Shown piece by piece: positions 4,818-17,522 of a stretch of 53,800 bases of DNA. Below the pieces are notes generated by a model. It was given only the letters and a program-made list of their open reading frames with translations, was not told the origin of the DNA and searched no databases. The translations under genes were made by a program, and so were the position numbers. Each line of letters opens with the position of its first letter. The stretch's first letter is position 1. Location of the stretch: NCBI GenBank assembly GCA_013416795.1, contig RQSC01000022.1:50802-104601 (forward strand), given 5' to 3'. The stretch is from Prasinococcaceae sp. CCMP 1430 (taxonomy: Eukaryota > Plantae > Prasinodermophyta).

Positions 4818-7800
4818 ATGTATTTTTTTTTGTTTTTTTTGGCGCTGTTGGCGATGCGGTGCGGTGCGGCGCCCAGCACCGCCAGCCACAGCGCGCGCGG
4901 CGTTCCCCCCCCGGCGCTGCCGCCGCGGGGCAAACCCGCCCGCCGCACCTCCCCGCCCTCCACGAGGGAGCGCCCCTCTGGGAGGCGCCAACCCCGCGCC
5001 TCGGCCGGCGTGTCGTCGTCGGACTGCCCGCCGGCGGCGTCGGTGACGACCCCCGCGGGCGCGGGCGTGGCGGGCTACCGCGACAGCGCCTTCGGAGGCG
5101 AGGCCGCGCTGCTCTCCTCTCCGCGTGGCGTGGCGCTGCGCCCCGCGGGCGACGTGCTCTACGTCGCAGACGCGGGGAACAATCGCGTGCGCGTCGCCGT
5201 GCTCCCCGCGAACGCCACCGCGGAGGGGATGAGCGCCCCCACCGAGTTGTACGGCCTGGCCGGAAACGGCGCCGCGGGCGCCTCTGACGACGACGACGCG
5301 CTCCAGGCGACCTTCAGCGCGCCCGCAGATGTGGCGGTCATCGCCGCCGGTGACTTGCTCGTCGCCGACACCGGCAACAGCCTCGTTCGCCGGGTCGCCG
5401 TCGCTGCGGGCAGCTCGCCGCCTGCGGCCGCTGGCGTAACCACCTTCGCGGGCCACGGCATCGCGGGCCTGTTTGACAGCCCCGACCCGCTCGCGGCCAT
5501 GTTCAACGCGCCCGAGGGCATCGCGCACGACGCCGCCACCAACGTGACCTACGTGGCGGACACGGGCAACAACGCCGTGCGCGCGATCAGCTGGGACGCC
5601 GCCGCGGGTGCGCGCGGCGCCGCGGGCGCGGTGACGCTGCTGGCCGGGTCCTCCGCGGGCCAAGCGGGCTTCGCAGACAGCATGGGAGGCGACACCGATG
5701 GGTCGGGGGCGCGCTTCGACGCCCCGCGAGGCCTGGCGCTCGGGTTGGAGGGCGCGGTGCTGTACGTGGCAGACACGGGCAACGGCGCCGTGCGCGCGAT
5801 CGACACGGTCACGGGGGTGGTCAGCACGCTGGTGAACCCGCCCGGCTCGTCGCCCGCGGCCGTGAACGGCCTGGTGCAGCACCCCACTGGCGTCGCATTC
5901 GATCCCGCCGTGGGGCTCTACGTCTCCGATCGCATAGGCGATATTGTGGTGCTGGTCGGCACCGACCCCGACGTCGACGAGGACACCGCCGCTGCCGAGG
6001 CCGAGGCGGCGGCCGCCGCGGCCACGCCCGCGGCGGTCACCATGGGCGTGTACGGCGTCCCGCGCCCCGTGGCGGGGGCGCGCGCAGGCGGCGATGGGCT
6101 GCGCGACGGCGTGGGCGACGAGGCGCGCCTGCACCGCCCTGCGGGGCTCGCGGTGGGTGCCGCGGGCACGCCCTTCGCGGGGGTCGTCTTCGTGGCCGAC
6201 GAGCTCGCGCATGCCGTCCGCCGCCTCGACGTGGAGGCGCCTGTGGCGCTCACCGTCAAGGTGACAGGCGTGGGCGACTTCGACAACCACACGGGCGTCG
6301 ATGGCGCCAACACGCGCCCCGGCCGTCACCAGGACCAGTACGAGGCGGGCTACTACGCGATCAACGGCCCCCCGCACAACGAGACCAACCACGTGTACGA
6401 CCACATCACGTACCACGGCGAGGAGCACGAGCTCACGCTGTGCACGTATCCCTCGCAGAGCACCTTCGTGTACTTCCGCGGCCGTGTGGCGGCGACCGTG
6501 ACCGACGAGGCCGGCGGGCATGTGTACCTCGCTTGGGAGGGCGCGAGCGCACAAGACAGCCGCAGCGAGACGCTGCGGCTGCGTGGGTCAGGATGCGCCG
6601 ACGAGGACGCGGCGAACTACAACCCCTACGCCACGTCGCACGTTGCCTCGAAATGCGTGGCAGGGCACAAGGCTACCCTGGTGGTGCGCGCGTCAGGCGC
6701 GACTGGCGGGGCGTACCAGATTGACGGCCCCGCGTTCTTCCACTTCGACGAGCTCGAGGGCCTCGCGGACAGCGCGGACGAGGACGAGGTTCACGAAATC
6801 ACGCTTTCGTACTATCCCGGCGCGAGCTACACGTTCCTGCTGCGCGGCCAGGTGAACGCCAGCCTGCACTCGCCCAGTGGCGCGTGGGGCGAGTACCTCG
6901 GCTGGGCGGGAAACGCCTCCTCGGACCGCGTGCTGCTCTCCTTCCGGCCGCCCGGCCCTGGCTGCACCGACGCCGCAGCGTCCAACTACAACGCCCTCGC
7001 GCTGCACAACGACGGCTCGTGCATCTCCGGTAGCGATGTGGACGTGTCCGTGTCGGCGACGAACGCCTCTCGCGTGGGCTACCGCGCGCAGCATTCGGCC
7101 GAGGACGCCGCGCCACCCGACTGGTTCGCGCGTGGCGCGTTCACGGTGATCCACGCGGGCACGGCGGCGGAGGTCGCGCTGAGCCACCTCTTCGAGGAGG
7201 GCGACGGCCTCAGCGGCGGCGGGGACACGGCGGGCGGCGGTGATGGAGGCGCTCAGGCGCAGGAGGTGACGCGGCGCGTGCGCCTGCCCCCGGGCCGGTA
7301 CGAGTTGACCTTCTTCGGCCAGGTGTCGGGCGAGGCGACCGACGCAGCGAGTGGATCACCGCTGGTGTCGTTCGACGGCGCGCTCGAGCTGACGCTCTAC
7401 GTCGACGAGAACGGCTTCGCGCGCACGCTCGAGGAGGGCGCGGTGCTCTTCCGCGTTGCGGTTGACCCCACCAATCCGGTGCCCGTGACCGACGCGGGCG
7501 GACATGTGGGCCAGGTGGACGTGGACGCAGGAGCGGTGGTGGTTCCTGAAGGTGCCATTGAGGAGGGCGAGGTGGTTGACATCACGCTTGGGGGCATCGA
7601 CGCCGACGGCGCGCACGTTCCTAGCTACGAGACTCTCAAGGCCGAGTTCGGCGGCCGGGAGATGTACCCCATTGGGCAGATCTTCAGGTTCCTGCCACAC
7701 GGCCAGAAGTTCCTGAAGCCGGTGACCATCCAGGTCCCGTTCGATGTGCGGAGCGGACTGGCGGGGGCGTGCGGCACCGCGGCGGGCGTGCCGTGCGAGC

Positions 7801-10800
7801 ACGCGCTCACTTTCGTGCGTGCGTCGGACGAGGCTGCCGACAACTGGCGCGTGATGGCAGGGGGGTCGTTCAAGGACGGCGTGGGGACGCTCGACGTTGA
7901 CACGTTTTCCCTCGTGGCCATCGTGCTGCGCGCGCGCGTGGACGCGCTCGTGCCCACGCACGGCGGCTCGGCCACCGGCGGCGCGATGATCACCGTGGTG
8001 GGCTCGCAGTTCCACGAGAGCTCGTTCACCTTTTGTCGCTTCTCTGGGGGTGCGCTGCCGACGCGCGGCGTCCACACCAAGGCCGAGGTCATCTCCGAGC
8101 GCCGCATGGCGTGTGCGGTGCCGCGTGGCGCCGCGGGGTTCGTCACGGTCGAGTACATGCAAGCCCGCACGCTGATGGTGTCCAACACCTCCACGCAGGT
8201 GCTCGTTCACTCGCCGCCAAGGTTGGCGGCAGTCACTCCGCGCGGCGGCGGGCGCGACGGCGGCACGCTCGCGACCCTGCGCGGCGCTGACCTTCACGCC
8301 TACGCCGCGGGGTCCTCGCACGGCGGGCACATGCGCGCGGCGTGTGAGGTCGGGCCCGCGCGCGGCGGTGGCGGCTCGCGCGGGGGTGGCGTGCGCACGT
8401 CTGTGGCGCGCATGCTGTCGTCGGTGCTCGCCGTGTGTGAGATACCCGACGCGCGCTCCGCGGGCGTCGAGATCGACGTGGGTGGCAGCGCCGTCGACGC
8501 GGAGCACGGCCTCGCGGCGGCGCGCGTGGCGCTCGTGCGCGGTGAATCGCGCGTCGCGCGCGAGCGCACGTTCGGCTTTGCGCAGCCAGGTCTCGAGACC
8601 GCCGAGATGCAGGGCAACTCGTTTGTGCACTCCCCCGCGCACGACGAGGCGGCGACCATCGTCCAGGCCAGCGCTGCGGGGGCCGGTCCGGGCGCGCTGC
8701 TCGCCATGCGCGACTACTGCTTCGCGGGCATCGGCGGCTTCGCCGCGAAAGACGCGTCGGCCGGGTCTGTGGGCGGCGGCTCGAGCGTGCTTGTGTCGGG
8801 GGAGAGCACGTGCTCGCCCATGTCTGCGTCGTGCCGCTGCACCTTCGGGACGGTGTCCGTCGGTGCGCTGCCGTCGATTCCGCACGGTGCGAATGGCATA
8901 TACGGCGACGGTGGCGCTTGGCAACACGTCCAGTGCGTGTCGCCGTCGGGGGCTGCGGGGTCGCAGGTGCCCGTGACTGTAGGTGCATCTGCCTCCGCAG
9001 AGGCGTCGACGCCGCTCGGCACGTTCGCGTATGACCCCCCGCAGACAACCGCCGGCCGCGCGCAGTCGAGCAGCGACGACTCAATTATTGGCACGAGCGC
9101 CCTCGCCGCCGACGCGAGGGGTGGCGAGGCCGTCACTGTGTACGGAGGGGCGCTGAGCACCGCGGGGAGTGCTCTCTCGCTGGGGTGTGCATTCGGCATT
9201 GCCGCAGTGTCTGCCGCCGCCCGAGCGACGAGCGGCGCGGTGTGCCTCATCCCCGCACATCCGGCAGGCTTCGTCCCGCTTCGCGTGGTCTCGTTGTCGT
9301 CGGGCACGCACTCACGCGGGAGCGCGCACGCGCAAAAGCTCGCCGCGGCGCAGCTTTCCGTCGTAGAGACGCCCTGGGTGCGTGACTTCGATCGCGCGGT
9401 GCGCCTTGCGGGCGGTGGCGGCGTGCTTGCAATCCATGGTGCGCATCTCCAGTCGCCAGCGCGCCCGCTCGCGTGCGAGTGGGAAAGCGGCGGCGGCGGC
9501 CGCGCCGTCGGGAAGAGCGCACTCGGGACTGCGCTCGGCGTCGCCAGCGCCAGCGCCGGCGGCGCAGCAGGTATGGGGCACCTGCGCGCGGTGTCGAGCG
9601 TGCTGGCCGCGTGTGTCATTCCTGAGGCAGAAGAGTCCGTACTAGGATCGGATCCCTCGGATTGGGGCGCCGCTGGGGAGGCGCAGGTGCCTCAGGAGCT
9701 CTCTCTCGCAGCGATGCTCGTACCTGCCGCGGGCGGCGGCGCTGGCGTGGCGGAGGGGCCTTCGGCGGGAGCGACGGGCTCTGGTCCGTCCGTGCGTGTG
9801 TCCTTTGTTGCAGGTGCCGACGCGGAGGCGATCGTGGTCGAGGCCGGCCCAGAGGACGGCGCCGGTGAAGGTCTCCCTGCGGACGGGGGCGCGGTCGTGT
9901 CGGTGGTCATGCCATCCGCGGCGCGGGGATCCGCGCGTGCGCCTTCGCTGGTGGCTGAGGCGACGTCGGGAGGTCGCGGCGTGCAGGGAGCGCTCGACAC
10001 CGCGCGCCACGCGTCGATCGTGTGCGACTTTGGCACCGTGGTCGGGGTGCACGCGGCGCCCATGTCTGCTGCACCTGCCTCGCTCGGGCGTGGCGTCGGA
10101 ACGGTGGCATGCGTCGCACCAGCGCGGGCTGCCGGCGTGGCGCAGCTGAGCCTGCGAGCAGCCACGGCGTCCCTCGCCGCCGGCTCGCGTCAGCTGCGAG
10201 CGCCAAACGTTGGATACGACTCGCGGATCGGCGGCGCGAGCGTCGGCCCCGCGCCGGGCGCTGTCGCGATGCCCGAGTCAATGCCGAGCGGCGGCAGCGG
10301 TGTGCTCATTGTTTCCCTCGAGGGCGTCCCGCCGCAGAGGCAATGGCGCCCACCAGCGCAACTGCTCTGCAGTTTCGCCGGCAGGCGCGGCGACGCGAGC
10401 GCGACGGCGCAGCTGGTGCGTGCCGCTGCGACAGGAGTCGGTGGAGGGAGTGCCGCGTGCCTGGCGCCGCCGCTGCAGGCCGGCTTCGCCGTGGTGACGG
10501 TGACGACCGCCCCGGGCGCGAGCGTTCGCGCCGGCTCGGACGCCTTCGTGGTCGCGGCGGTGCACGTGCGCGAGCCCGAAGTCGTGCGCGCCCTGCTTCC
10601 TGCGATCGGTCCCGCGCGCGGGGGCGTGGTGGTGCACGCCGTCGGTGCCAACATGCACGAGGGCGCCCGAGCTCGGTGCGCCTTTGGTGCGCATGCGCCA
10701 TCGTCCGACGGAGGGGGTGGCTCGAGCGCCTACGCATTCAGCAGCGCCCTGCTCGCGTGCGAGGTCCCGCCGGCGTCGGCGGCCGGCGCCCGCATCGCGG

Positions 10801-11388
10801 CTGGTGCGCAGCAGCAGCTGGCGGCGGTGGCCACCGTGCCCATGTCGGTGATCTCGGACCACTCCCGCGTCCCCGCGGGTGCGCACGCTTTGCCGCATGC
10901 ACACGCGTCGGCCGCTGCCGGGCCACAGTTCGCGTACGCGCTGCAGCCCGTCCGCGACGTGCAGGTGCATTCCTCGCACCGCCGCGGCGGGCAGACCTCG
11001 GGCGCCATCGGAAGCGCGCGTGGCGGCACGAGCGTGGTCCTCGCGGGCGAGGGTGCGTGCCGCCGCCTCGTCGCGCGCCGTCTTTGGGCGATGCAGGCGC
11101 GGCATACGGCTCGGCGCGCGTCGCGTGTGCTGACCCACAGTCTTTGCTCTCCCTCGCGCGCGCTCTGCAGGCTTCAGCGCGTACGTGGTCTCGGATCACT
11201 TCGGCGGCGAGTTCACGCCGGGCTGCGCGTTCGGCACGGTGTACGTGGCCGCGCGCGCCGCCAACGCGAGCGCGCTCGAGTGCGTCAGCCCGGCGCGCGC
11301 CGCGGGCGCCGCGTCGCTCGCCGTGGTCGCGCACGCGGCCGCGCACTCGCTCTCCGAGGGCCTCGCCGACACCTTCGTGTACACGTGA
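4818..11388 (+). CDS. Giant secreted/surface protein: NHL beta-propeller + 2 GCxDxxAxNYN repeats + ZU5-like domain + 9 IPT/TIG-like repeats; join(4818..11052,11171..11388), alternative ATG at 4854
   Basis: Repeated LYVADTGN..VR / F.AP.G.A NHL motifs; GCADEDAANYN and GCTDAAASNYN; PIGQIFRFLPHGQKFLKPVTIQVP (ZU5-like); G...GG..V.V.G..CxF...C..P repeats. A GT-AG intron at 11053-11170 (branch GCTGAC ~11129) restores the last repeat. TGTAA at 11460. Confidence 0.85.
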
Positions 11389-11762
11389 GGACCCAGCGCG
11401 CAAACACCACGCACTCCCATCGCCACTCTCACATACATACAGTAGGATTAGACGAGGTGTGTAATATGCTAGAGCGACTCTCAACCCACCGAGTGCGCGT
11501 GCGCGTGCGCGTGCGAGGGCGCTCTTCACACACGCGGGCGCGCGCCACCGACGAGCGCGCGAGTGCGCAGTCTGTGCGATTCGCGCGCCTTCGCGCGGCT
11601 GCGATGTCGGAGAGATTGAAAGCAGGCCCGCTGGCCCTGCGGCGGCGCTGCGCTCCTCGCACCCGCGCCGCTACTTCCTACGTGTACACTGAAGTCTGTG
11701 TGTGTGTATGTGCGCGGGCGTGTGTGCGTGCTCGGCGCCTGCGCGGCCTTCGCACACGGACG

Positions 11763-12131
11763 TCAGAAGGCGTCGTCGTCGTCGCTCTCATCGTCCCAGT
11801 CGTTGGCCTCGGTGCCCTCCTCGAAGTCCACCTGCACGTCGTACTGCCAGCCCTCGTCGCCGGGGCGCAGCCGCCGCTGCTCGAAGCCGACGTCCATGCG
11901 CGCCTTGGCTCGCACGAGCGCGTCCGCGCTCACGTGTTGCAAGTCCTCCACGTCGGCGTCGGCGTCGGCGTCTGCCGCGGGCGTGCTCGGCTCGTGTGGG
12001 GCGCCGTCCGCGCCCTCGGGGCCCCCGTCGCCCAGCGGCGGCAGCAGGCGGCCTGTGCTGGCGGGCGCGCTGCTGAAGACGCCGCCCCGCCTCTCCCCGT
12101 CGGCGGCGGCGTCGACGCTGCCGGAGCCGCT
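11763..12131 (-). CDS. CEP19: CEP19-like centriolar protein, 3' part only (5' part lies in the assembly gap 12132-12264)
   Basis: The C-terminus EDLQHVSADALVRAKARMDVGFEQRRLRPGDEGWQYDVQVDFEEGTEANDWD matches the CEP19 pattern DL.......L...K..MD..FE......D....YD..V.F.......WD. Confidence 0.75.
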   Translation of the reverse strand, partial: SGSGSVDAAADGERRGGVFSSAPASTGRLLPPLGDGGPEGADGAPHEPSTPAADADADADVEDLQHVSADALVRAKARMDVGFEQRRLRPGDEGWQYDVQVDFEEGTEANDWDDESDDDDAF

Positions 12132-12621
12132 NNNNNNNNNNNNNNNNNNNNNNNNNNNNNNNNNNNNNNNNNNNNNNNNNNNNNNNNNNNNNNNNNNNNN
12201 NNNNNNNNNNNNNNNNNNNNNNNNNNNNNNNNNNNNNNNNNNNNNNNNNNNNNNNNNNNNNNNNGTGTGTGTGTGTGTGCGCGTGCGTGTGTGCGTGTGT
12301 GTGCGTGCGTGTGTGTGCGTGTGTGTGTGTCGGTGTGCCACCGCGCGCACTGTCAGGCCGCCACCGCGCCAAGAGGTCAAGGTTTCGTTCCAAAGTCAGG
12401 GCCGGTCTCCCGAGTTTGGGTAAATTCTACACGAAATAGGGTTTGTGGCTAAGTACCGCGCAGCCGCCGCCGCGGCGGCTGCGCGCTGCCACAGCGAGGG
12501 CGCACGCCGCGGGCCCTGTGGGCGCCCGGCGGGGCGCCAGGCGAGGGGTTCGGGGCGCATCCGCAGCGGGAGGAACGGCCTGGTGTCAGCAGCCGCCGCC
12601 CGCGCCACGACAGCGGCCGCG

Positions 12622-15600
12622 ATGGCGCCCGGGCCCGTGCAGGAGCCGGCGGTGGCCGCTGCAGACGCTGCCGCATGCGCGGTGGAGCCGGCGGCAGCGG
12701 CCGCTGCTCATGCTGCGCCGGCGGCGGACTCGGTGCCAGAGCTGCAGGCGGAGGCGGGTGCAGTGGTGGACCAGGATGAGGCGAAGCCCATTCCCAACCC
12801 CGAGCCCGATGCGCAAGTGGTGCCGAAGGCCGAGACGGAGGTGGAGTCCGGAGCTGGGACGGTCGCGGAGGCAGAGGACGCGCAGCAGGGTGGGGAGCCG
12901 GAGCTGGCGCCGGAGGTTGAGGCCGAGGCGGAGCCCGCACACGTTGCGCGCGCGTGGGCCGCCGACGGCAGTGCCGGCGGCCCCGTCCCGGCGCCCGCGC
13001 CCGGAGACGTCGTCGTCGGCAGTGGTGAGCGCGACGGTGCCTCGGGAAATGCGCCGAACTCCGATGCGCTCGGCGCGGCGCGCCGGGGGCTCGTTGGCCA
13101 AGGCGCGCTGGTGCCGACGGCGCTCGGCGAGCGGGCGGCCGTGTACTGCGACTGGGCGGCGCACGGACGCGCGCTGCGCGGCGTCGAGCGGCGCGTGCTC
13201 GATTGCGTGCTTCCCACGCTGGCCAACACGCACACCACCACGAGCGCGGCCGGCCTGCAGACGACCTGCTTCCGCGAGGAGGCGCGCGGGGCGATCGCGC
13301 GCGCCACCAACTGCCGCGTGCAGCGCGCCGACCGCCACGCCGACGTGGTGCTTTTCGCGGGCCGCGGCGCGACCGGCGCCGCCAACAAGCTGGTCGGTGC
13401 GCTCGGCCTGCTTGCGCCGCTCCCGGAGGGCACGCCGGACTCGAAGCGCGCCGTGGTGCTCGTCGGGCCGCACGAGCACCACTCCAACCTGCTGCCGTGG
13501 CGCGAGTCGTCGGCGCTCGTGGTGAGCGTCCCCGAGGACGCGCGCGGTGGCGTCGACCGCGCCGCGCTCGCGCGCCTGCTGGAGCGGTACGCTGCGGTGC
13601 ACCCGCTGGTGATCGGCGCCTTCGCTGCGGCCTCGAACGTCACAGGCATAGAGGCGGACGTCGACGGGATCAGCGAGCAGCTGCACCGCGCGGGCGCGCT
13701 CGCCGTGTGGGATTACGCCGCGGCGGCGCCATTCGCGCCGCTGGACATGAACCCCGTCGTCATGATGGCCGACGGGTCGGGCGCCAATCCATACGTCTAC
13801 AAGGATGCCGCTCTCGTCTCAACGCACAAGATGGCCGGCGGCGCCGGCGCGCCCGGGGTGCTGCTCGCCAAGCGCCGCCTGTTTTCGCTGGCGGCGGCGC
13901 CGTCCACGCCGGGGGGTGGCACCGTCTTCTTCGTCACGTCGACGGATCACCGCTATCTGTCCAACCGCGAGGAGAGGGAGGAGGGGGGCACGCCGGACGT
14001 GGTCGGCGCCGCGCGCGCGGGGCTGGCGTTCGCCGCGCGCGCCGACATGCTGCGCGCCGGGGGGCACGCACGCGACATGGCGATTGCCGCGCGTGTGGAT
14101 GGCGCTCTGCGCGCGACGCCTCGGCTGGCTGTGCTCGGGCCGACGGCGGCTGACGTGCCGCGGCTAGCGGCGGTGTCTTTCCTCGTCGAGGCTCCTGCGC
14201 CATCCGTCGAAGGCCACGCTGGCGGCGCCTCCGGCACAGCGCCCGCCCGCGCCGCCGTGCGTGAGGGCCTCTATCTCCACTACAACTTCGTGTGTGCGCT
14301 CCTCAACGACGTTTTCGGCGTGCAATGCCGCGGCGGATGCGCATGCGCCGGCCCCTACGGGCTCGAGCTGCTGGGCGTGACGCCGAGTGCCGCCGCGGCG
14401 CTCGAGACGCAGCTACTCGACAAGCAGGAGGTGCTGCGGCCGGGGTTCACGCGGCTGAGCTTCGCACCGATGATGGCGGACTTCGAGGTTGAGTACGCCA
14501 TCGAGTGCGTGCGCGTGGTCGCCGAGTGCGGCTGGCGCGCGTTGCCGCAGTACCGCTTCGACACCCGCACGGGCGAGTGCCGCCACGCGAGCTGGGCGCG
14601 CTCCTTTCCCAAGCGGCGCTGGCTCGCGCACATGCGCTGGGAGGATGAGGGGGGCGGCCAGAGTGAAAGCCACGATGCACGCGATCGCACGTCGGTCGCC
14701 TTTGTGGACGGTGGCGAGGAGGGCTTGCGCGGCCGGCTCGAGGCGCAGCTCGCTGAGGGGGCGGCATGGCTGCGATCGCTCGGAGGACCCGAGGACGCCG
14801 TGCGCGCGCACCTCGCCGAGGGTCTCAACGCTGGACTGGAGGGCGAGGCGGAGCGCCTGCGTTGGTTCATGCTGCCGGGCGAGGCGGCGGCGCTCATGGG
14901 CGGTACCGCCTGCGCGCGCGCCACGGCCGCGTCTGCTGACGCGGTGCCCGTGCGGGTGCGCGAGTACGCGTCCGATGCATCGAACGAGGCCGAAGCGCCC
15001 GACGCCTCGTTCGAGCCGGCTGACGAACTCGCGGAGGAGGGAGACGACGTGTTTTGTGACGCCCTGGAGGATGCAGCGACAGTTGAGGCGCGGGACGAGG
15101 CACCCATTGCGCCGCCGGCTCCGAGCGAGCCTCGCGACGCTCAGCCATCGCCGGTCGAGCAAGGTCCGGCGCGCGCGGCGAGCCGCAAGCACGCGCTCCA
15201 GGGTGGCGGCGGCGGCGGCGCGGGCGCACGCGCGCCGGCGTATGTGGCGCTCGGCGAGAGCCTCAAGAAGGAGGCCAAGGCCGAGGCCGAGGCCGAAGCC
15301 GAAGCCGAGGCGTGCGCTCGCGGTGAAGGCGGAAACCAAGCGGATGGCGGCTCGCGCGCGGAGGGCGCCACGGATGGCTCGCACGCGGGCTCGCGGCTCA
15401 GCGCCAAGCAGCTTCGCCGGCGCAAGGCCGCGGGGCCATTCGTCACGCCTCCGCCCAAGGTCATGAAGAGCCTGGCAAAGGCGAACGCGCACTGGGGCAT
15501 GATCCAGCCAGGGGACAAGGTCCTGCTGGGGCTATCAGGCGGGAAGGACTCGCTCGCGCTGCTGCACTGCCTAGCGGCGTACCAGCGCCGCTTCCCGCCG

Positions 15601-16920
15601 GGCTCGTGGAGCTTTGCGGTGGCGACGGTCGACCCTGGCACTGACGCGTTCAACCCGCGGCCCCTCATCCCGTACGTGGAGAGCCTCGGCCTAACGTACC
15701 ACTACCTCGAGAATCCCATAATGCAGTGGGCGGCCGATGGCCACATGCAGGGGGACAGCATCTGCGCGTTCTGCTCGCGCATGAAACGCGGCGCGCTCTA
15801 CTCGTGCTGCCGCGAGCATGGCTACAACAAGCTGGCGCTCGCGCAGCATCTCGACGACCAGGCCGAGTCGTTTCTCATGAGCACCCTTCACAACGGCAAG
15901 CTCAGGGTCATGAAGGCGTCGTACACGATCGACGCCGGCGACATCGACGTCATCCGCCCCTTCGTGTACGTTCGCGAGCGGGCGCTGCGCGACTTTTCGT
16001 ACGCCGCGGGGCTGCCCGTCATCGCCGACAACTGCCCCGCGTGCTTCGAGGAGCCCAAGGAGCGCCACAGCGTCAAGAAGCTCCTCCAGAAGGAGGAGGC
16101 CGTCTTTCCAAGCGTGTACTCGTGCATCCTTCGTGCCATGACGCCCGTCATGGACCCGCTCGTTCAAGACGTCCTGGCGTCCGTCAGCGCCGACCTCGAT
16201 GCCCGCGCGGGAGAGAAGGCCGCGCGCGCCAAGGCGGCGGACCCGCTGCACCAGGCGCGACTTCGTGCCGGTGGCGAGCGGGCGCTGCAGGCAGCCAAGC
16301 GTGCTGAGGACAACGTGCGCGGCAACGGCGTGCGCGCCCACGGCAACGGCGACGGCGCGCGTGCCAACGGCAACGGTTCGCACGCCAACGGCAACGTCGC
16401 GCACGCCAACGGCAACGGCGTGCACGCCAACGGCAATGGTGTGCACGCCAACGGCAATGGCGTGTGCGCCGACGGCAATGTCAGCGGCGCTCTCGCCAAC
16501 GGCGTGCATCCGAATGGAGGCAAGGCCGCCGATGCCTCCGCCGATGCAGACCCCGATGCGGCGCTGCGCAGCTCGCGCGCGCGCGCGTACTCGTACTTCG
16601 CCGCCTCCTCGGGTGGCGCTGAGAACGGCGTCACTGTCGCATGCGGCAACGGCGCCCGCGCCCTCGCCGGAGACAACGGCGCCGCCGCCGAGGCGGCCGC
16701 GCTGGCGGACTTTTCGGAGGCGGAGCTCCTCGCGGAGCTGCGCAGGCGCCAGGTGGCCAAGCGCGGCGGGGGGAAGAGCGGACAGGGCGCGCGCGCGCAC
16801 GTGCAAGGCGTGCCGCGCGTGCGCGACGAGGCCGACGCCTTCGAGGCCGCCAAGTCCGCCGCGGCCGCGGGCCTGGCGTGTGCGCCTCCTGGCGCGGCGG
16901 CCGCCGTCGCGGGCGCCTGA
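12622..16920 (+). CDS. Intronless fusion of a class-V PLP aminotransferase (cysteine desulfurase-like) and a TtcA-type PP-loop tRNA thiolase
   Basis: N-domain: YCDWAAHGR, ANTHT, GPHEHHSNLLPWRE, AASNVTG, WDYAAAAP, PLP-Lys STHKMAGGAG, EEGGTP, RGGCACAGPYG. C-domain: MIQPGDKVLLGLSGGKDS, CAFCSRMKRGALY, NKLALAQHLDD, VIRPF, CPAC. First ATG at 12622; TGTAA at 17244. Confidence 0.92.
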   Translation: MAPGPVQEPAVAAADAAACAVEPAAAAAAHAAPAADSVPELQAEAGAVVDQDEAKPIPNPEPDAQVVPKAETEVESGAGTVAEAEDAQQGGEPELAPEVEAEAEPAHVARAWAADGSAGGPVPAPAPGDVVVGSGERDGASGNAPNSDALGAARRGLVGQGALVPTALGERAAVYCDWAAHGRALRGVERRVLDCVLPTLANTHTTTSAAGLQTTCFREEARGAIARATNCRVQRADRHADVVLFAGRGATGAANKLVGALGLLAPLPEGTPDSKRAVVLVGPHEHHSNLLPWRESSALVVSVPEDARGGVDRAALARLLERYAAVHPLVIGAFAAASNVTGIEADVDGISEQLHRAGALAVWDYAAAAPFAPLDMNPVVMMADGSGANPYVYKDAALVSTHKMAGGAGAPGVLLAKRRLFSLAAAPSTPGGGTVFFVTSTDHRYLSNREEREEGGTPDVVGAARAGLAFAARADMLRAGGHARDMAIAARVDGALRATPRLAVLGPTAADVPRLAAVSFLVEAPAPSVEGHAGGASGTAPARAAVREGLYLHYNFVCALLNDVFGVQCRGGCACAGPYGLELLGVTPSAAAALETQLLDKQEVLRPGFTRLSFAPMMADFEVEYAIECVRVVAECGWRALPQYRFDTRTGECRHASWARSFPKRRWLAHMRWEDEGGGQSESHDARDRTSVAFVDGGEEGLRGRLEAQLAEGAAWLRSLGGPEDAVRAHLAEGLNAGLEGEAERLRWFMLPGEAAALMGGTACARATAASADAVPVRVREYASDASNEAEAPDASFEPADELAEEGDDVFCDALEDAATVEARDEAPIAPPAPSEPRDAQPSPVEQGPARAASRKHALQGGGGGGAGARAPAYVALGESLKKEAKAEAEAEAEAEACARGEGGNQADGGSRAEGATDGSHAGSRLSAKQLRRRKAAGPFVTPPPKVMKSLAKANAHWGMIQPGDKVLLGLSGGKDSLALLHCLAAYQRRFPPGSWSFAVATVDPGTDAFNPRPLIPYVESLGLTYHYLENPIMQWAADGHMQGDSICAFCSRMKRGALYSCCREHGYNKLALAQHLDDQAESFLMSTLHNGKLRVMKASYTIDAGDIDVIRPFVYVRERALRDFSYAAGLPVIADNCPACFEEPKERHSVKKLLQKEEAVFPSVYSCILRAMTPVMDPLVQDVLASVSADLDARAGEKAARAKAADPLHQARLRAGGERALQAAKRAEDNVRGNGVRAHGNGDGARANGNGSHANGNVAHANGNGVHANGNGVHANGNGVCADGNVSGALANGVHPNGGKAADASADADPDAALRSSRARAYSYFAASSGGAENGVTVACGNGARALAGDNGAAAEAAALADFSEAELLAELRRRQVAKRGGGKSGQGARAHVQGVPRVRDEADAFEAAKSAAAAGLACAPPGAAAAVAGA
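16321..16510 (+). repeat. Coding 21-nt tandem repeat encoding (GNGVHAN)n
   Basis: About 8 degenerate GGCAACGGCGTGCACGCCAAC units in the tail of the fusion protein. Confidence 0.9.
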
Positions 16921-17522
16921 CAGTAGGTGCAGGCGGTGCGTTTCGTGTGCGTGTGCGTGTGCGTCAGGCGTACACGCACTCGCGCACAACAGCATGTGCG
17001 CATGCGCACATGCGCACAGTATATGCGCATGCGCACACAGCCACGTGTGCGCATGCGCACATTCGCATTGTGCTGCGCCCCGCTGCCTCCCTCCCTCAGT
17101 CCTCCCCCCGAACGCGCGATCCGTGTGACGGCGCGGGCCCCAACAGGTGCACTGTGCGCCAAGGCCCGCCGCCTGACGGAAGTGGCCGCCACGCGCGGCC
17201 ACGCGCCTGGGCGGGCGACAGCGCGCGACCCGCGCGCTGCTCATGTAACATCAGATACGATACACACGCGCGCGCGCGTGCACACACACCGCGTGCTACA
17301 GTGCTGCTTGTGGAGACCCACATGCACGCACACTTACACGACCGCGTACACACGGGTGCGAGCACGCGCGCACACACACACCGCGTGCTGCAGTGGTGCT
17401 TGCGCGAGCCCGCATACGCATACACCGCGCGTGCTGCCGTCCGTGTGGACGGCACGCGCGTGCCCGCAGCGGCAGACGGGCGCGCGCCCTCGGGCTCTCG
17501 CGGCGCCATGCGCGAGCGCGCT

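What the first reader, a model, noticed from the sequence alone, without database searches (positions are those of the whole stretch)
12622..16920. Eukaryotic cysteine-desulfurase-TtcA fusion: candidate self-contained tRNA 2-thiolation machine
Seen: a single intronless ORF joins a complete class-V PLP domain (PLP-Lys STHK, candidate persulfide Cys in RGGCACAGPY) through an acidic linker to a PP-loop domain (SGGKDS) that has only two CxxC motifs (CAFC, CPAC). Established: this two-CxxC layout is that of bacterial TtcA, which makes s2C32 and depends on an Fe-S cluster and IscS. Eukaryotic Ctu1/Ncs6 differs in having extra terminal zinc fingers and using Urm1, and s2C is not a recognised modification of eukaryotic cytosolic tRNA. 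Inference: the protein mobilises its own sulfur (or selenium) and thiolates an RNA or other substrate in cis. I recall similar architectures in some other eukaryotes but know of no characterised function. The acidic N-terminus does not look like an organellar transit peptide.
Basis: partly seen in the sequence, partly recalled or inferred. Interest (0 to 1): 0.82.

Follow-up and report, generated by a model that had tools for sequence, protein, structure and literature searches.

The report
Desulfurase–TtcA-like fusion gene, Prasinoderma
This green alga has one gene that joins a sulfur-releasing enzyme to a TtcA-like enzyme that probably puts sulfur onto transfer RNA. The fusion is real and expressed, but it is widespread in eukaryotes and a 2026 preprint already proposes the same function, so this is one more member of an untested family.

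Summary
Window 12622-16920 (+) is one uninterrupted 1432-codon ORF of Prasinoderma coloniale (EukProt PRCOL_00007051). It has a SufS-type PLP module (res 151-756: HH286/287, K403, RGGCxCAGP with C575) and a TtcA-like PP-loop domain (res 936-1190: SGGKDS, CAFC, CPAC).

One 4216-nt contig of a transcript-like run covers both domains. It carries both in-frame "introns" of the public model, so that model is probably wrong.

The fusion is neither chance nor new. At least 646 proteins of fusion length match, and all 120 listed carry both domains. They come from green algae, stramenopiles, haptophytes and euglenids, and the Atlas adds arthropods. Both domain trees recover a green-algal and an oomycete clade.

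The C domain scores far higher for TtcA than for TilS, TtuA or NcsA, but stays below NCBI's TtcA cut-off. It is 27% identical to E. coli TtcA and 52-54% identical to short bacterial TtcA-like proteins that, as far as I found, are uncharacterised.

The N module belongs to a large uncharacterised bacterial and eukaryotic family. In 80 bacterial loci it was never next to a PP-loop gene.

A September 2026 preprint reports s2C32 in Aplysia tRNA-Lys and names the same fusion as the candidate enzyme.

Function remains inferred. Verdict: new member of a known, biochemically untested kind.

The parts
12566..12621 (+). 5' untranslated leader. It runs from the start of the transcript-like contig to the first ATG.
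   Evidence: The run X1 contig begins at 12566 and there is no depth upstream. No ATG lies between 12566 and 12622, and the start context is GCCGCGATGG.
12622..16920 (+). Complete uninterrupted coding sequence: 1432 codons plus TGA.
   Evidence: It is colinear with X1 contig 12566-16781 with no gaps. It is 100% identical over the searched C-domain region (res 940-1200) to EukProt PRCOL_00007051-RA, and that model's sequence equals this ORF minus two in-frame pieces.
12622..13071 (+). Acidic, unconserved N-terminal region (res 1-150). It does not look like a transit peptide.
   Evidence: It has 28 D/E against 4 K/R. Column occupancy is 0.12-0.39 in the 132-sequence alignment.
13072..14889 (+). 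SufS-type (type II) PLP module with a family-specific C-terminal extension of about 180 aa (res 151-756).
   Evidence: Pfam Aminotran_5 covers res 174-516. The AlphaFold2 model has pLDDT 89.7. The top 50 PDB matches are all SufS, NFS2 or CsdB, with TM 0.79-0.86 by target. Stand-alone bacterial relatives end right after the LRWF motif.
13477..13482 (+). His286-His287, in the motif EHHSNLLPW.
   Evidence: They align to the EHHAN(I/L)(I/V)PW motif of solved SufS enzymes. They are at least 90% conserved in 132 fusions.
13828..13830 (+). Lys403, the predicted PLP Schiff-base lysine (STHK).
   Evidence: It aligns to the SGHK of SufS. It is invariant in 69 family members.
14338..14346 (+). The Cys573-Ala-Cys575 motif inside RGGCACAGP. 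Cys575 is the predicted persulfide cysteine.
   Evidence: RGGCACAGP aligns to RTGHHCAMP of E. coli SufS, so C575 matches the SufS catalytic Cys and C573 matches a His. Both Cys are 100% conserved in 132 fusions and in bacterial relatives.
14857..14868 (+). The LRWF motif that closes the N module.
   Evidence: R747 and W748 are at least 90% conserved. In stand-alone bacterial proteins it lies 7-9 residues from the C-terminus.
14890..15426 (+). Acidic linker (res 757-935). It holds two short conserved motifs: around P799 (15010-15027) and around P872 (consensus KYPLR, 15229-15243).
   Evidence: P799 is present in 119 of 132 fusions and P872 in 122 of 132. The linker has 33 D/E against 20 K/R.
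15164..15340 (+). First 'intron' of the public gene model (GT..AG, 177 nt, in frame). Here it is read as coding.
   Evidence: The model lacks res 848-906. The X1 contig and a metatranscriptome contig (14974-15350) run through the stretch. It contains the conserved P872 motif.
15427..16191 (+). TtcA-like PP-loop ATPase domain (res 936-1190).
   Evidence: NCBIfam TtcA NF007972 scores E 8.9e-50 and 169.6 bits over res 946-1184. Identity is 52-54% to short bacterial TtcA-like proteins and 27% to E. coli TtcA.
15535..15552 (+). PP-loop SGGKDS, the ATP pyrophosphatase signature.
   Evidence: It is at least 90% conserved.
15763..15774 (+). Cys1048-x-x-Cys1051. They are predicted to be two of the three [4Fe-4S] ligands.
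   Evidence: They align to E. coli TtcA Cys122 and Cys125, which are essential cluster ligands (PMC4081106). They are 100% conserved.
15805..15807 (+). Cys1062, an extra cysteine specific to the fusion clade.
   Evidence: It is present in 97% of 132 fusions. It is absent from E. coli TtcA and from the Thiothrix TtcA-like proteins.
16033..16044 (+). Cys1138-Pro-Ala-Cys1141. Cys1141 is the predicted third cluster ligand.
   Evidence: It aligns to PCNLC of E. coli TtcA. The second Cys of that motif is C213 in RefSeq numbering and is called Cys222 in PMC4081106, where it is essential.
16192..16917 (+). Poorly conserved tail (res 1191-1432). It contains a 21-nt tandem repeat (16339-16478, HANGNGV units), the motif FSEAELLAELRRRQ (16711-16752) and a single near-terminal Cys1420 (16879-16881).
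   Evidence: The Cys column is shared by 52% of fusions. Many relatives end in a Cys pair.
16315..16524 (+). Second 'intron' of the public gene model (GT..AG, 210 nt, in frame). Here it is read as coding repeat.
   Evidence: The model lacks res 1232-1301. The X1 contig is colinear across it, and metatranscriptome contig 16288-16394 crosses the supposed donor site.
16921..17178 (+). The part of the 3' untranslated region that is seen.
   Evidence: X1 contig 16804-17178 covers the stop codon and the 258 nt beyond it.

Best explanation
The gene encodes a probably cytosolic two-enzyme polypeptide of a family widespread in eukaryotes. Shown: the sequence, the fold, the conservation and the single transcript-like contig. 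Inferred: every chemical step that follows. The N module is a SufS-type PLP enzyme. It would bind cysteine on Lys403-PLP and take its sulfur as a persulfide on Cys575. The C domain is a TtcA-like PP-loop ATPase. It would hold a [4Fe-4S] cluster on Cys1048, Cys1051 and Cys1141, adenylate C2 of a pyrimidine, and replace the oxygen with sulfide bound to the free iron of the cluster. The most likely target is cytidine 32 of some cytosolic tRNAs, giving s2C32. The fusion would channel the persulfide within one polypeptide or across a dimer. Cys573, the clade-specific Cys1062 or the C-terminal cysteine may act as a relay. The Fe-S cluster and the reducing equivalents must still come from the cell, so the protein is not fully self-contained.
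For: Both domains lie in one ORF and on one contig of a transcript-like run. At least 646 proteins of fusion length match, and all 120 listed carry PF00266 and PF01171. They include complete MMETSP and EukProt transcripts and Atlas clusters whose commonest known phyla are Arthropoda and Oomycota. In 132 fusions the invariant or nearly invariant residues include the known catalytic ones: HH, the PLP Lys, R..C575, the PP-loop and three Cys that align to the E. coli TtcA cluster ligands. The N-module model has pLDDT 89.7 and its nearest solved folds are all type II cysteine desulfurases. For the C domain, TtcA scores 169.6 bits, TilS_N 57.6, TtuA 29.3 and NcsA 24.5. The two domain trees both recover a green-algal and an oomycete clade, which fits co-inheritance of the two halves. 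Other desulfurase fusions to PP-loop-type sulfur enzymes exist: Aminotran_5 with ThiI, with MnmA and with PAPS_reduct. The preprint 10.64898/2026.09.27.754811 maps s2C32 on Aplysia tRNA-Lys(UUU). Its only TtcA homologue is a 1177-aa protein with CsdA and TtcA-like domains and the same CxC, CSFC and CPAC motifs.
Against: No member of the fusion family has been assayed, as far as I found, and neither has any member of the stand-alone N family or of the short bacterial TtcA-like family. The C domain falls below the TtcA equivalog cut-off (169.6 against 272) and is only 27% identical to E. coli TtcA. In 80 bacterial loci the N-family gene never has a PP-loop gene within 10 kb. Its only recurrent neighbours are an AsnC/Lrp regulator, an ABC ATPase and Cys/Met PLP enzymes, so its ancestral job may be amino-acid catabolism. 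Type II desulfurases usually need a separate acceptor such as SufE or SufU, and none is evident here. The Aplysia link is a correlation, without genetics. The docking prediction for the two domains gave no answer. No s2C data exist for Prasinoderma.
Confidence: 0.55

Rival explanations
1. The chemistry is the same but the target differs. The TtcA-like domain thiolates another nucleoside or position (for example a uridine, a tRNA position other than 32, or rRNA), or it thiolates a small molecule.
For: The C domain and its nearest bacterial relatives form a subfamily far from characterised TtcA. Identity is 27%, the tree branch is very long, and scores of 170-224 bits stay under the 272-bit equivalog cut-off. 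I found no characterised member of the subfamily. PP-loop thiolases with the same three-Cys cluster site act on U34 (NcsA) and on U54 (TtuA).
Against: TtcA is by far the best-scoring curated family. The only eukaryote in which this fusion has been discussed carries s2C32 and has no other TtcA homologue.
Confidence: 0.2
2. The two halves work independently. The N module serves general cysteine or sulfur metabolism, as its bacterial relatives may, and the TtcA-like half takes sulfur from the usual NFS1-based route. The fusion then only co-expresses them, or the linker is cut after translation.
For: There was no genomic link between the two families in 80 bacterial loci. Stand-alone N-family paralogues exist in oomycetes, and a partial Micromonas model carries the N module only. 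The linker is about 180 aa and mostly unconserved. The docking run gave no answer. The preprint also raises cleavage as a possibility.
Against: The fusion has been kept across several eukaryotic supergroups, and the two domain trees share the same main clades. The linker holds two motifs conserved in at least 90% of members. Desulfurases have been fused to PP-loop-type sulfur enzymes repeatedly elsewhere.
Confidence: 0.12
3. The N module is mainly a selenocysteine lyase, and the protein handles selenium: either selenation of a nucleoside or recycling of selenium.
For: Among the top structural matches is E. coli CsdB/SufS, solved both as a selenocysteine lyase and with a perselenide intermediate (1jf9, 1kmk). 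From general knowledge, type II enzymes often have high selenocysteine lyase activity.
Against: Nothing in the sequence marks selenium specificity. From general knowledge, known 2-selenouridine synthesis uses a different enzyme (SelU/MnmH) with selenophosphate. The fusion also occurs in oomycetes and arthropods.
Confidence: 0.05
4. It is an artefact: two neighbouring genes read together because stop codons are rare in a 70% GC genome, or a misassembly.
For: High GC gives many long spurious ORFs in this window. An N gap lies just upstream, at 12132-12264.
Against: One contig of a transcript-like run spans both domains with no mismatch. The same architecture is seen in all 120 listed matches, from many lineages, including assembled transcripts. 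A second strain has a 95.9% identical 1422-aa protein.
Confidence: 0.02

Closest known systems
Aplysia californica LOC101861551, called the 'IscS-TtcA' fused protein (bioRxiv 10.64898/2026.09.27.754811)
   Same: The order of domains is the same: a CsdA/SufS-like domain first and a TtcA-like domain second. The size is similar (1177 against 1432 aa) and both have a long, poorly conserved linker. Both have the PLP lysine, a conserved Cys-x-Cys (Aplysia C448/C450, here C573/C575), SGGKDS, a C(S/A)FC motif and CPAC. The proposed function, s2C32 synthesis, is the same.
   Different: I could not align the Aplysia sequence here, so the match rests on its published motifs and on arthropod Atlas clusters. 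The preprint calls the N domain IscS-like and could not place its catalytic cysteine. Alignment to SufS here places it at C575. The preprint surveyed molluscs and mentions birds and insects, not algae or protists. It also calls the linker unconserved, but two short motifs are conserved.
Escherichia coli TtcA, the tRNA cytidine(32) 2-sulfurtransferase
   Same: Both have the PP-loop SGGKDS, the central CxxC and the second Cys of the later CxxC. These align to the three essential [4Fe-4S] ligands. Neither has terminal zinc-finger CxxC pairs.
   Different: Identity is only 27%, and the score is 169.6 bits against 513.8 for E. coli TtcA and a cut-off of 272. The domain here is fused to its presumed sulfur source, whereas E. 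coli uses free IscS. It has an extra conserved Cys1062 and lacks the E. coli C-terminal extension.
Type II cysteine desulfurases: SufS, CsdA/CsdB and plastid NFS2
   Same: The fold matches (TM 0.79-0.86 by target). The EHH(S/A)N..PW motif, the S-x-HK PLP lysine and the R-x-G-x-x-C-A-x-P catalytic loop are shared.
   Different: Identity is about 20%, and the score is 70.6 bits against the SufS subfamily cut-off of 475. The motif is Cys-x-Cys where SufS has His-His-Cys. There is an extra helical C-terminal extension of about 180 aa ending in LRWF. No SufE or SufU partner is evident, and the gene is not in a suf operon.
Ctu1/Ncs6-Ctu2 with Urm1-Uba4, the eukaryotic cytosolic s2U34 pathway; also archaeal NcsA and TtuA
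   Same: They belong to the same PP-loop superfamily and use Fe-S-dependent 2-thiolation of a pyrimidine in tRNA.
   Different: NcsA scores 24.5 bits and TtuA 29.3 bits, against 169.6 for TtcA. The domain here has no N- or C-terminal zinc-finger CxxC pairs. The sulfur would come from a fused desulfurase, not from a Urm1 thiocarboxylate.
Other fusions of a desulfurase to a PP-loop-type sulfur enzyme (Aminotran_5 with ThiI in Bacillota, with MnmA in Myxococcota, with PAPS_reduct in Methanobacteriota)
   Same: The logic is the same: a class-V PLP enzyme joined to a PP-loop-type enzyme.
   Different: These are prokaryotic, have different partner domains and belong to different desulfurase subfamilies. 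They are Atlas leads at scores of 0.83-0.87 and I did not examine them further.

Membership tests
TtcA (tRNA cytidine(32) 2-sulfurtransferase, NCBIfam NF007972 equivalog) | PP-loop motif SGGxDS | tested here: met
   SGGKDS lies at res 972-977 and aligns to E. coli TtcA.
TtcA (tRNA cytidine(32) 2-sulfurtransferase, NCBIfam NF007972 equivalog) | Three essential cysteines that bind the [4Fe-4S] cluster (E. coli Cys122, Cys125 and the second Cys of PCNLC) | tested here: met
   C1048, C1051 and C1141 align to them. Their essentiality is from PMC4081106. They are 98-100% conserved in 132 fusions.
TtcA (tRNA cytidine(32) 2-sulfurtransferase, NCBIfam NF007972 equivalog) | Score at or above the curated equivalog cut-off of 272 bits | tested here: not met
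   The score is 169.6 bits. E. coli TtcA scores 513.8, and the closest bacterial relatives score 212-224, also below the cut-off. I therefore file it as TtcA-like, not as TtcA.
TtcA (tRNA cytidine(32) 2-sulfurtransferase, NCBIfam NF007972 equivalog) | Forms s2C at position 32 of tRNA | not testable with these tools
   The only support is a correlation from the Aplysia preprint.
Type II cysteine desulfurase (SufS/CsdA, TIGR01979) | Fold-type I PLP fold closest to SufS, with the PLP lysine in S-x-H-K | tested here: met
   The model has pLDDT 89.7, and the top 50 PDB matches are all SufS, NFS2 or CsdB. K403 aligns to the SufS lysine.
Type II cysteine desulfurase (SufS/CsdA, TIGR01979) | Catalytic cysteine in the loop R-x-G-x-x-C-A-x-P | tested here: met
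   RGGCACAGP aligns to RTGHHCAMP of E. coli SufS, and C575 is invariant.
Type II cysteine desulfurase (SufS/CsdA, TIGR01979) | Score at or above the subfamily cut-off of 475 bits | tested here: not met
   The score is 70.6 bits. Stand-alone bacterial relatives score 104-143 bits. This is a separate, SufS-like family.
Type II cysteine desulfurase (SufS/CsdA, TIGR01979) | A dedicated persulfide acceptor (SufE, SufU or CsdE) encoded nearby or as a partner | tested here: inconclusive
   Clustering of all ORFs within 10 kb in 80 bacterial loci gave no recurrent neighbour family beyond an AsnC/Lrp regulator, an ABC ATPase and a few others. The small clusters were not all scanned, and the eukaryotic genome was not surveyed.
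Ctu1/Ncs6/NcsA and TtuA (group with terminal zinc fingers) | Additional N- and C-terminal CxxC zinc-finger pairs and a strong match to the family model | tested here: not met
   NcsA scores 24.5 bits (cut-off 500) and TtuA 29.3 bits (cut-off 450). Only two CxxC motifs lie in the domain.
TilS (tRNA-Ile lysidine synthetase) | The TilS N-domain score at or above 93.6 bits, plus the TilS substrate-binding C-terminal domains | tested here: not met
   TilS_N scores 57.6 bits and full-length TilS 22.5 bits. No TilS C-terminal domain turned up in Pfam.
Eukaryotic SufS-like/TtcA-like fusion family (Aplysia LOC101861551 type) | Both domains in one polypeptide, in the order desulfurase then TtcA-like, with the CxC, C(A/S)FC and CPAC motifs | tested here: met
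   The motifs match those the preprint reports. Arthropod Atlas clusters with both Pfam domains score 0.97-0.98.
Eukaryotic SufS-like/TtcA-like fusion family (Aplysia LOC101861551 type) | Direct sequence alignment or tree placement with the Aplysia protein itself | not tested

The most novel reading that the evidence does not exclude
The fusion is an ancient, eukaryote-wide cytosolic route that makes s2C32 without NFS1 or Urm1. It would work as a three-part internal relay: a SufS-type persulfide on Cys575, then a built-in redox-active dithiol that reduces or relays it, then the Fe-S site of the TtcA-like domain. In many lineages the dithiol would be a C-terminal Cys pair such as C(A/P)PC(Y/F)EL. 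In some it would be a whole thioredoxin domain with WCPPC, and the clade-specific Cys1062 may also take part. Prasinoderma would carry a decayed version, with CAPP in place of CAPC. If so, s2C32 would be a common but overlooked eukaryotic tRNA modification that standard model organisms have lost.
Probability: 0.25. Interest if true: 0.7.

Novelty: new member of a known kind. Interest (0 to 1): 0.45.

Why it matters
Until a September 2026 preprint, 2-thiocytidine was thought to be absent from eukaryotic tRNA. That preprint points to this same fusion in molluscs as the likely enzyme.

This gene shows that the fusion also exists, intact and expressed, in a deep-branching green alga. The searches show it in stramenopiles, haptophytes, euglenids and arthropods as well. 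If the function holds, s2C32 may therefore be widespread in eukaryotes, made by a sulfur route separate from the Urm1/Ctu1 pathway.

The work adds three things to the preprint:
- It places the catalytic cysteine by alignment to SufS.
- It defines the true limits of the desulfurase module.
- It shows that both halves belong to large families that appear never to have been assayed.

The claim is easy to test in tractable carriers. As a discovery it is incremental, because the architecture is already in databases and the hypothesis is already in print.

Tried and rejected
- Docking: complex prediction of the N module against the TtcA-like domain scored 0.00, with no verdict. This is no evidence either way.
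- Bacterial gene linkage: two single look-ups (Marinobacter N-family, Thiothrix TtcA-like) and 80 genome loci with 10-kb flanks showed no PP-loop gene next to the N-family gene. Clustering the neighbours gave mostly shadow ORFs inside the GC-rich gene itself. The only weak recurrent partners were an AsnC/Lrp regulator in 13 loci, an ABC ATPase in 16 and Cys_Met_Meta_PP in 8.
- tRNA substrates: no tRNA gene lies in the window.
- Literature: searches combining TtcA with algae, oomycetes, diatoms or Euglena listed no relevant paper. Among the listed results of the other searches, only the Aplysia preprint described the fusion.
- RNA status of run X1: its record does not say RNA. I infer it from contig ends that coincide with the gene's ends.
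- Rooting the N-family tree on E. coli SufS gave a very long outgroup branch, so I draw no conclusion on whether the family is bacterial or eukaryotic in origin.
- A first regular expression for the tail motif was too narrow and found almost nothing. I replaced it with a direct look at the alignment.
- I did not use the large representative protein search, because the word search had already found hundreds of relatives.

Full report
**What is there.** The window is about 70% GC. Window 12445-16920 (+) is one open frame. Its first ATG is at 12622 in a GCCGCGATGG context, with no ATG between 12566 and 12622. This gives 1432 codons and a TGA stop. Pfam finds Aminotran_5 (res 174-516, E 2.7e-22) and ATP_bind_3 (res 966-1137, E 5.9e-15). 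Over the searched C-domain region the protein is 100% identical to EukProt PRCOL_00007051-RA, and that model's sequence equals this ORF minus two in-frame pieces. The genome is therefore Prasinoderma coloniale, and earlier notes of this scan on the same genome say the same.

**Gene model and expression.** The public model (1303 aa) differs from the ORF only by two in-frame GT..AG "introns": 15164-15340 and 16315-16524. A run of 12 Mb of contigs from the same organism has one 4216-nt contig lying on 12566-16781 with no mismatch and no gap. A second contig lies on 16804-17178, and almost nothing lies upstream of 12566. The run's record does not say RNA. Because the contig ends coincide with the gene's ends, I read it as a transcript.

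A true marine metatranscriptome holds pieces 90-97% identical over the N module, the linker and the C domain. One piece (14974-15350) runs through the first "intron", and another (16288-16394) crosses the supposed donor of the second. A second strain encodes a 95.9% identical 1422-aa protein that keeps both pieces. The first piece also contains a proline motif conserved in 122 of 132 relatives. So the gene appears intronless, both halves lie on one contig of a transcript-like run, and the annotated introns are probably wrong.

**The C domain.** Among curated families, TtcA wins clearly: E 8.9e-50 and 169.6 bits over res 946-1184. TilS_N scores 57.6, TtuA 29.3 and NcsA 24.5.

Aligned to E. coli TtcA, the PP-loop and C1048, C1051, C1138 and C1141 are invariant. 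C1048, C1051 and C1141 match the three cysteines that Bouvier et al. showed to be essential and to hold the [4Fe-4S] cluster (PMC4081106). The paper's Cys222 is C213 in RefSeq numbering.

The domain is nevertheless only 27% identical to E. coli TtcA and falls below the 272-bit equivalog cut-off. Its nearest stand-alone relatives are bacterial proteins of 240-280 aa (Thiothrix and other Gammaproteobacteria) at 52-56% identity. These also score only 212-224 bits. I therefore call it TtcA-like. I found no assayed member of this subfamily.

**The N module.** The nearest solved proteins by sequence are SufS-type desulfurases (E about 3e-12), with EHHSNLLPW matching EHHANLIPW and STHK matching SGHK. 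An alignment that includes E. coli SufS puts RGGCACAGP on RTGHHCAMP. Cys575 is therefore the counterpart of the SufS persulfide cysteine, and Cys573 replaces a histidine. An AlphaFold2 model built on 69 relatives is confident (pLDDT 89.7, pTM 0.91). Its 50 best PDB matches are all type II desulfurases: NFS2, SufS or CsdB, with TM 0.79-0.86 by target.

Stand-alone relatives of 550-600 aa are 44-46% identical over nearly the whole query. They end 7-9 residues after an LRWF motif. The module therefore spans res 151-756, and the true linker is only about 180 aa. The whole 608-residue shape recurs in Atlas clusters from Actinomycetota and Oomycota (TM 0.86-0.87). This is a SufS-like family of its own, scoring 70.6 bits against a SufS cut-off of 475.

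**Distribution and history.** A search on the C domain among proteins of fusion length found 646 matches, and all 120 listed carry both Pfam domains. They include oomycetes, Pylaiella, Hondaea, Paraphysomonas, Pseudoscourfieldia, Euglena and complete MMETSP transcripts. The N-module search added Tribonema and Chrysochromulina fusions. The Atlas adds two clusters with both domains whose commonest known phylum is Arthropoda.

In a tree of 152 C domains, all fusion domains and the longer proteins (over 285 aa, probably fusion fragments), plus five short rows including named eukaryotic fragments, form one clade apart from about 70 short bacterial proteins. Support is moderate (SH-aLRT 91, stem 0.45; quick search). 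The window groups with an 83%-identical relative and sits in a weakly supported group (SH-aLRT 82) with other probably green-algal sequences. The N-module tree recovers a green clade (95*) and an oomycete clade (96*), and ochrophyte rows group together in both trees. In it, stand-alone oomycete paralogues nest inside the oomycete fused clade, for example Phytophthora F441_17267 next to the fusion F441_17268. This pattern fits an old fusion inherited vertically with many losses. The root is not resolved.

**Bacterial context.** In 80 loci with up to 10-kb flanks, an HMM of the C domain found no PP-loop gene. The only recurrent neighbours were an AsnC/Lrp regulator (13 loci), an ABC ATPase (16) and Cys/Met PLP enzymes (8). 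The coupling of the two halves thus appears confined to eukaryotes in the data examined. The ancestral role of the N family may lie in sulfur amino-acid metabolism.

[quoted passage not shown] It finds that the only TtcA homologue is a 1177-aa protein with CsdA and TtcA-like domains, conserved in molluscs and, by its authors' statement, in birds and insects. It proposes that this protein is a dedicated s2C enzyme. Its conserved Cys448/Cys450, CSFC and CPAC match the motifs here. No genetics or enzymology is given. The listed results of my other searches showed no further description of the fusion.

**How it most likely works.** Shown: one polypeptide, both folds, conservation of the catalytic residues, and expression. 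Inferred: all the chemistry. PLP on Lys403 would strip sulfur from cysteine onto Cys575. The TtcA-like domain would hold a [4Fe-4S] cluster on three cysteines, adenylate C2 of cytidine 32 and insert cluster-bound sulfide, as proposed for E. coli TtcA. The fusion would channel the persulfide. The cluster and the electrons needed to turn persulfide into sulfide must come from elsewhere, so "self-contained" is too strong.

The acidic N-terminus (28 D/E against 4 K/R) argues for a cytosolic location. I put 0.55 on the full statement. Separately, I put about 0.97 on a genuine conserved fusion, about 0.75 on an active desulfurase and about 0.8 on an Fe-S-dependent RNA thiolase. The rivals are a different target (0.2), functionally independent or cleaved halves (0.12), selenium chemistry (0.05) and an artefact (0.02).

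**Extra features seen.**
- Cys1062 is present in 97% of fusions but absent from E. coli and Thiothrix proteins.
- The linker holds two short motifs conserved in at least 90% of members, around P799 and P872 (consensus KYPLR).
- Of the 132 fusions, 46 end in a Cys pair within the last 22 residues, against 5% of control windows. Examples are CTA(D/E)GC, C(A/P)PC(Y/F)EL and DGLCFEIA. Others end in IPCRELME with the two cysteines further apart.
- Two relatives instead carry a C-terminal thioredoxin-like domain with WCPPC.
- Prasinoderma has only CAPP at that place.

A built-in dithiol that reduces or relays the persulfide is an attractive reading, but it is untested.

**Verdict.** Novelty is limited: this is one more member, from a deep-branching green alga, of a widespread fusion family that databases already list and a recent preprint already links to s2C32. 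The docking prediction gave no answer.

Noticed in passing
window 15164-15340 and 16315-16524: The public gene model PRCOL_00007051-RA removes two in-frame GT..AG 'introns' (59 and 70 codons). The contig of the transcript-like run and the metatranscriptome contigs keep them. The first one contains a motif conserved across the family. The model is probably wrong.
   Followed up: yes
window 16339-16478 and 15271-15311: A 21-nt tandem repeat (6.7 copies, encoding HANGNGV units) and a GAGGCC hexamer repeat (EA dipeptides) lie inside the coding sequence. A second strain's protein has fewer units of both, so they vary in copy number in frame.
   Followed up: partly
relatives P0004-P0120 (C-termini); window 16879-16890: Many fusion proteins end in a short Cys-pair tail (C(A/P)PC(Y/F)EL, CTA(D/E)GC, IPCRELME, DGLCFEIA): 46 of 132 against 5% of control windows. 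Prasinoderma has CAPP at the aligned place. This could be a built-in redox or relay arm.
   Followed up: partly
P0061 and P0064 (metagenomic relatives), last ~150 residues: These fusions carry a third, thioredoxin/nucleoredoxin-like domain with a WCPPC active site after the TtcA-like domain.
   Followed up: partly
P0108 and P0281 (Phytophthora nicotianae F441_17268 and F441_17267): Going by their consecutive locus tags, oomycetes carry a stand-alone paralogue of the desulfurase module next to the fusion gene. The stand-alone clade nests inside the oomycete fused clade, which suggests tandem duplication followed by loss of the TtcA-like half.
   Followed up: partly
P0308 (Cladochytrium tenue) and P0227 (Cyprideis torosa): A chytrid 'stand-alone' protein sits inside the Phytophthora paralogue clade. 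An ostracod 262-aa TtcA-like protein sits among bacterial sequences. Both look like contamination or gene transfer in those assemblies.
   Followed up: no
L005-L084 (bacterial loci), for example L005:13027-13509: The stand-alone bacterial relatives of the desulfurase module occur in at least 588 species. In 13 of the 80 loci examined an AsnC/Lrp-type regulator lies within the 10-kb flanks, and in 8 loci a Cys/Met-metabolism PLP enzyme does. This is a large SufS-like family that seems never to have been characterised.
   Followed up: partly
ESM Atlas clusters: Analogous fusions of a class-V PLP enzyme exist elsewhere: with ThiI in Bacillota, with MnmA in Myxococcota and with a PAPS_reduct domain in Methanobacteriota. 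Joining a desulfurase to a PP-loop-type sulfur enzyme has therefore arisen several times.
   Followed up: no
window 4818-12452 and 12132-12264: A very long ORF (2544 codons as listed) ends just upstream of this gene and runs across an assembly gap of 133 N. I did not examine it. The contig of the transcript-like run for the fusion gene does not reach it.
   Followed up: no
window 16936-16964: A GTGCGT microsatellite starts 16 nt after the stop codon, inside the 3' untranslated region. GT/CA-rich repeats are frequent across this window.
   Followed up: no
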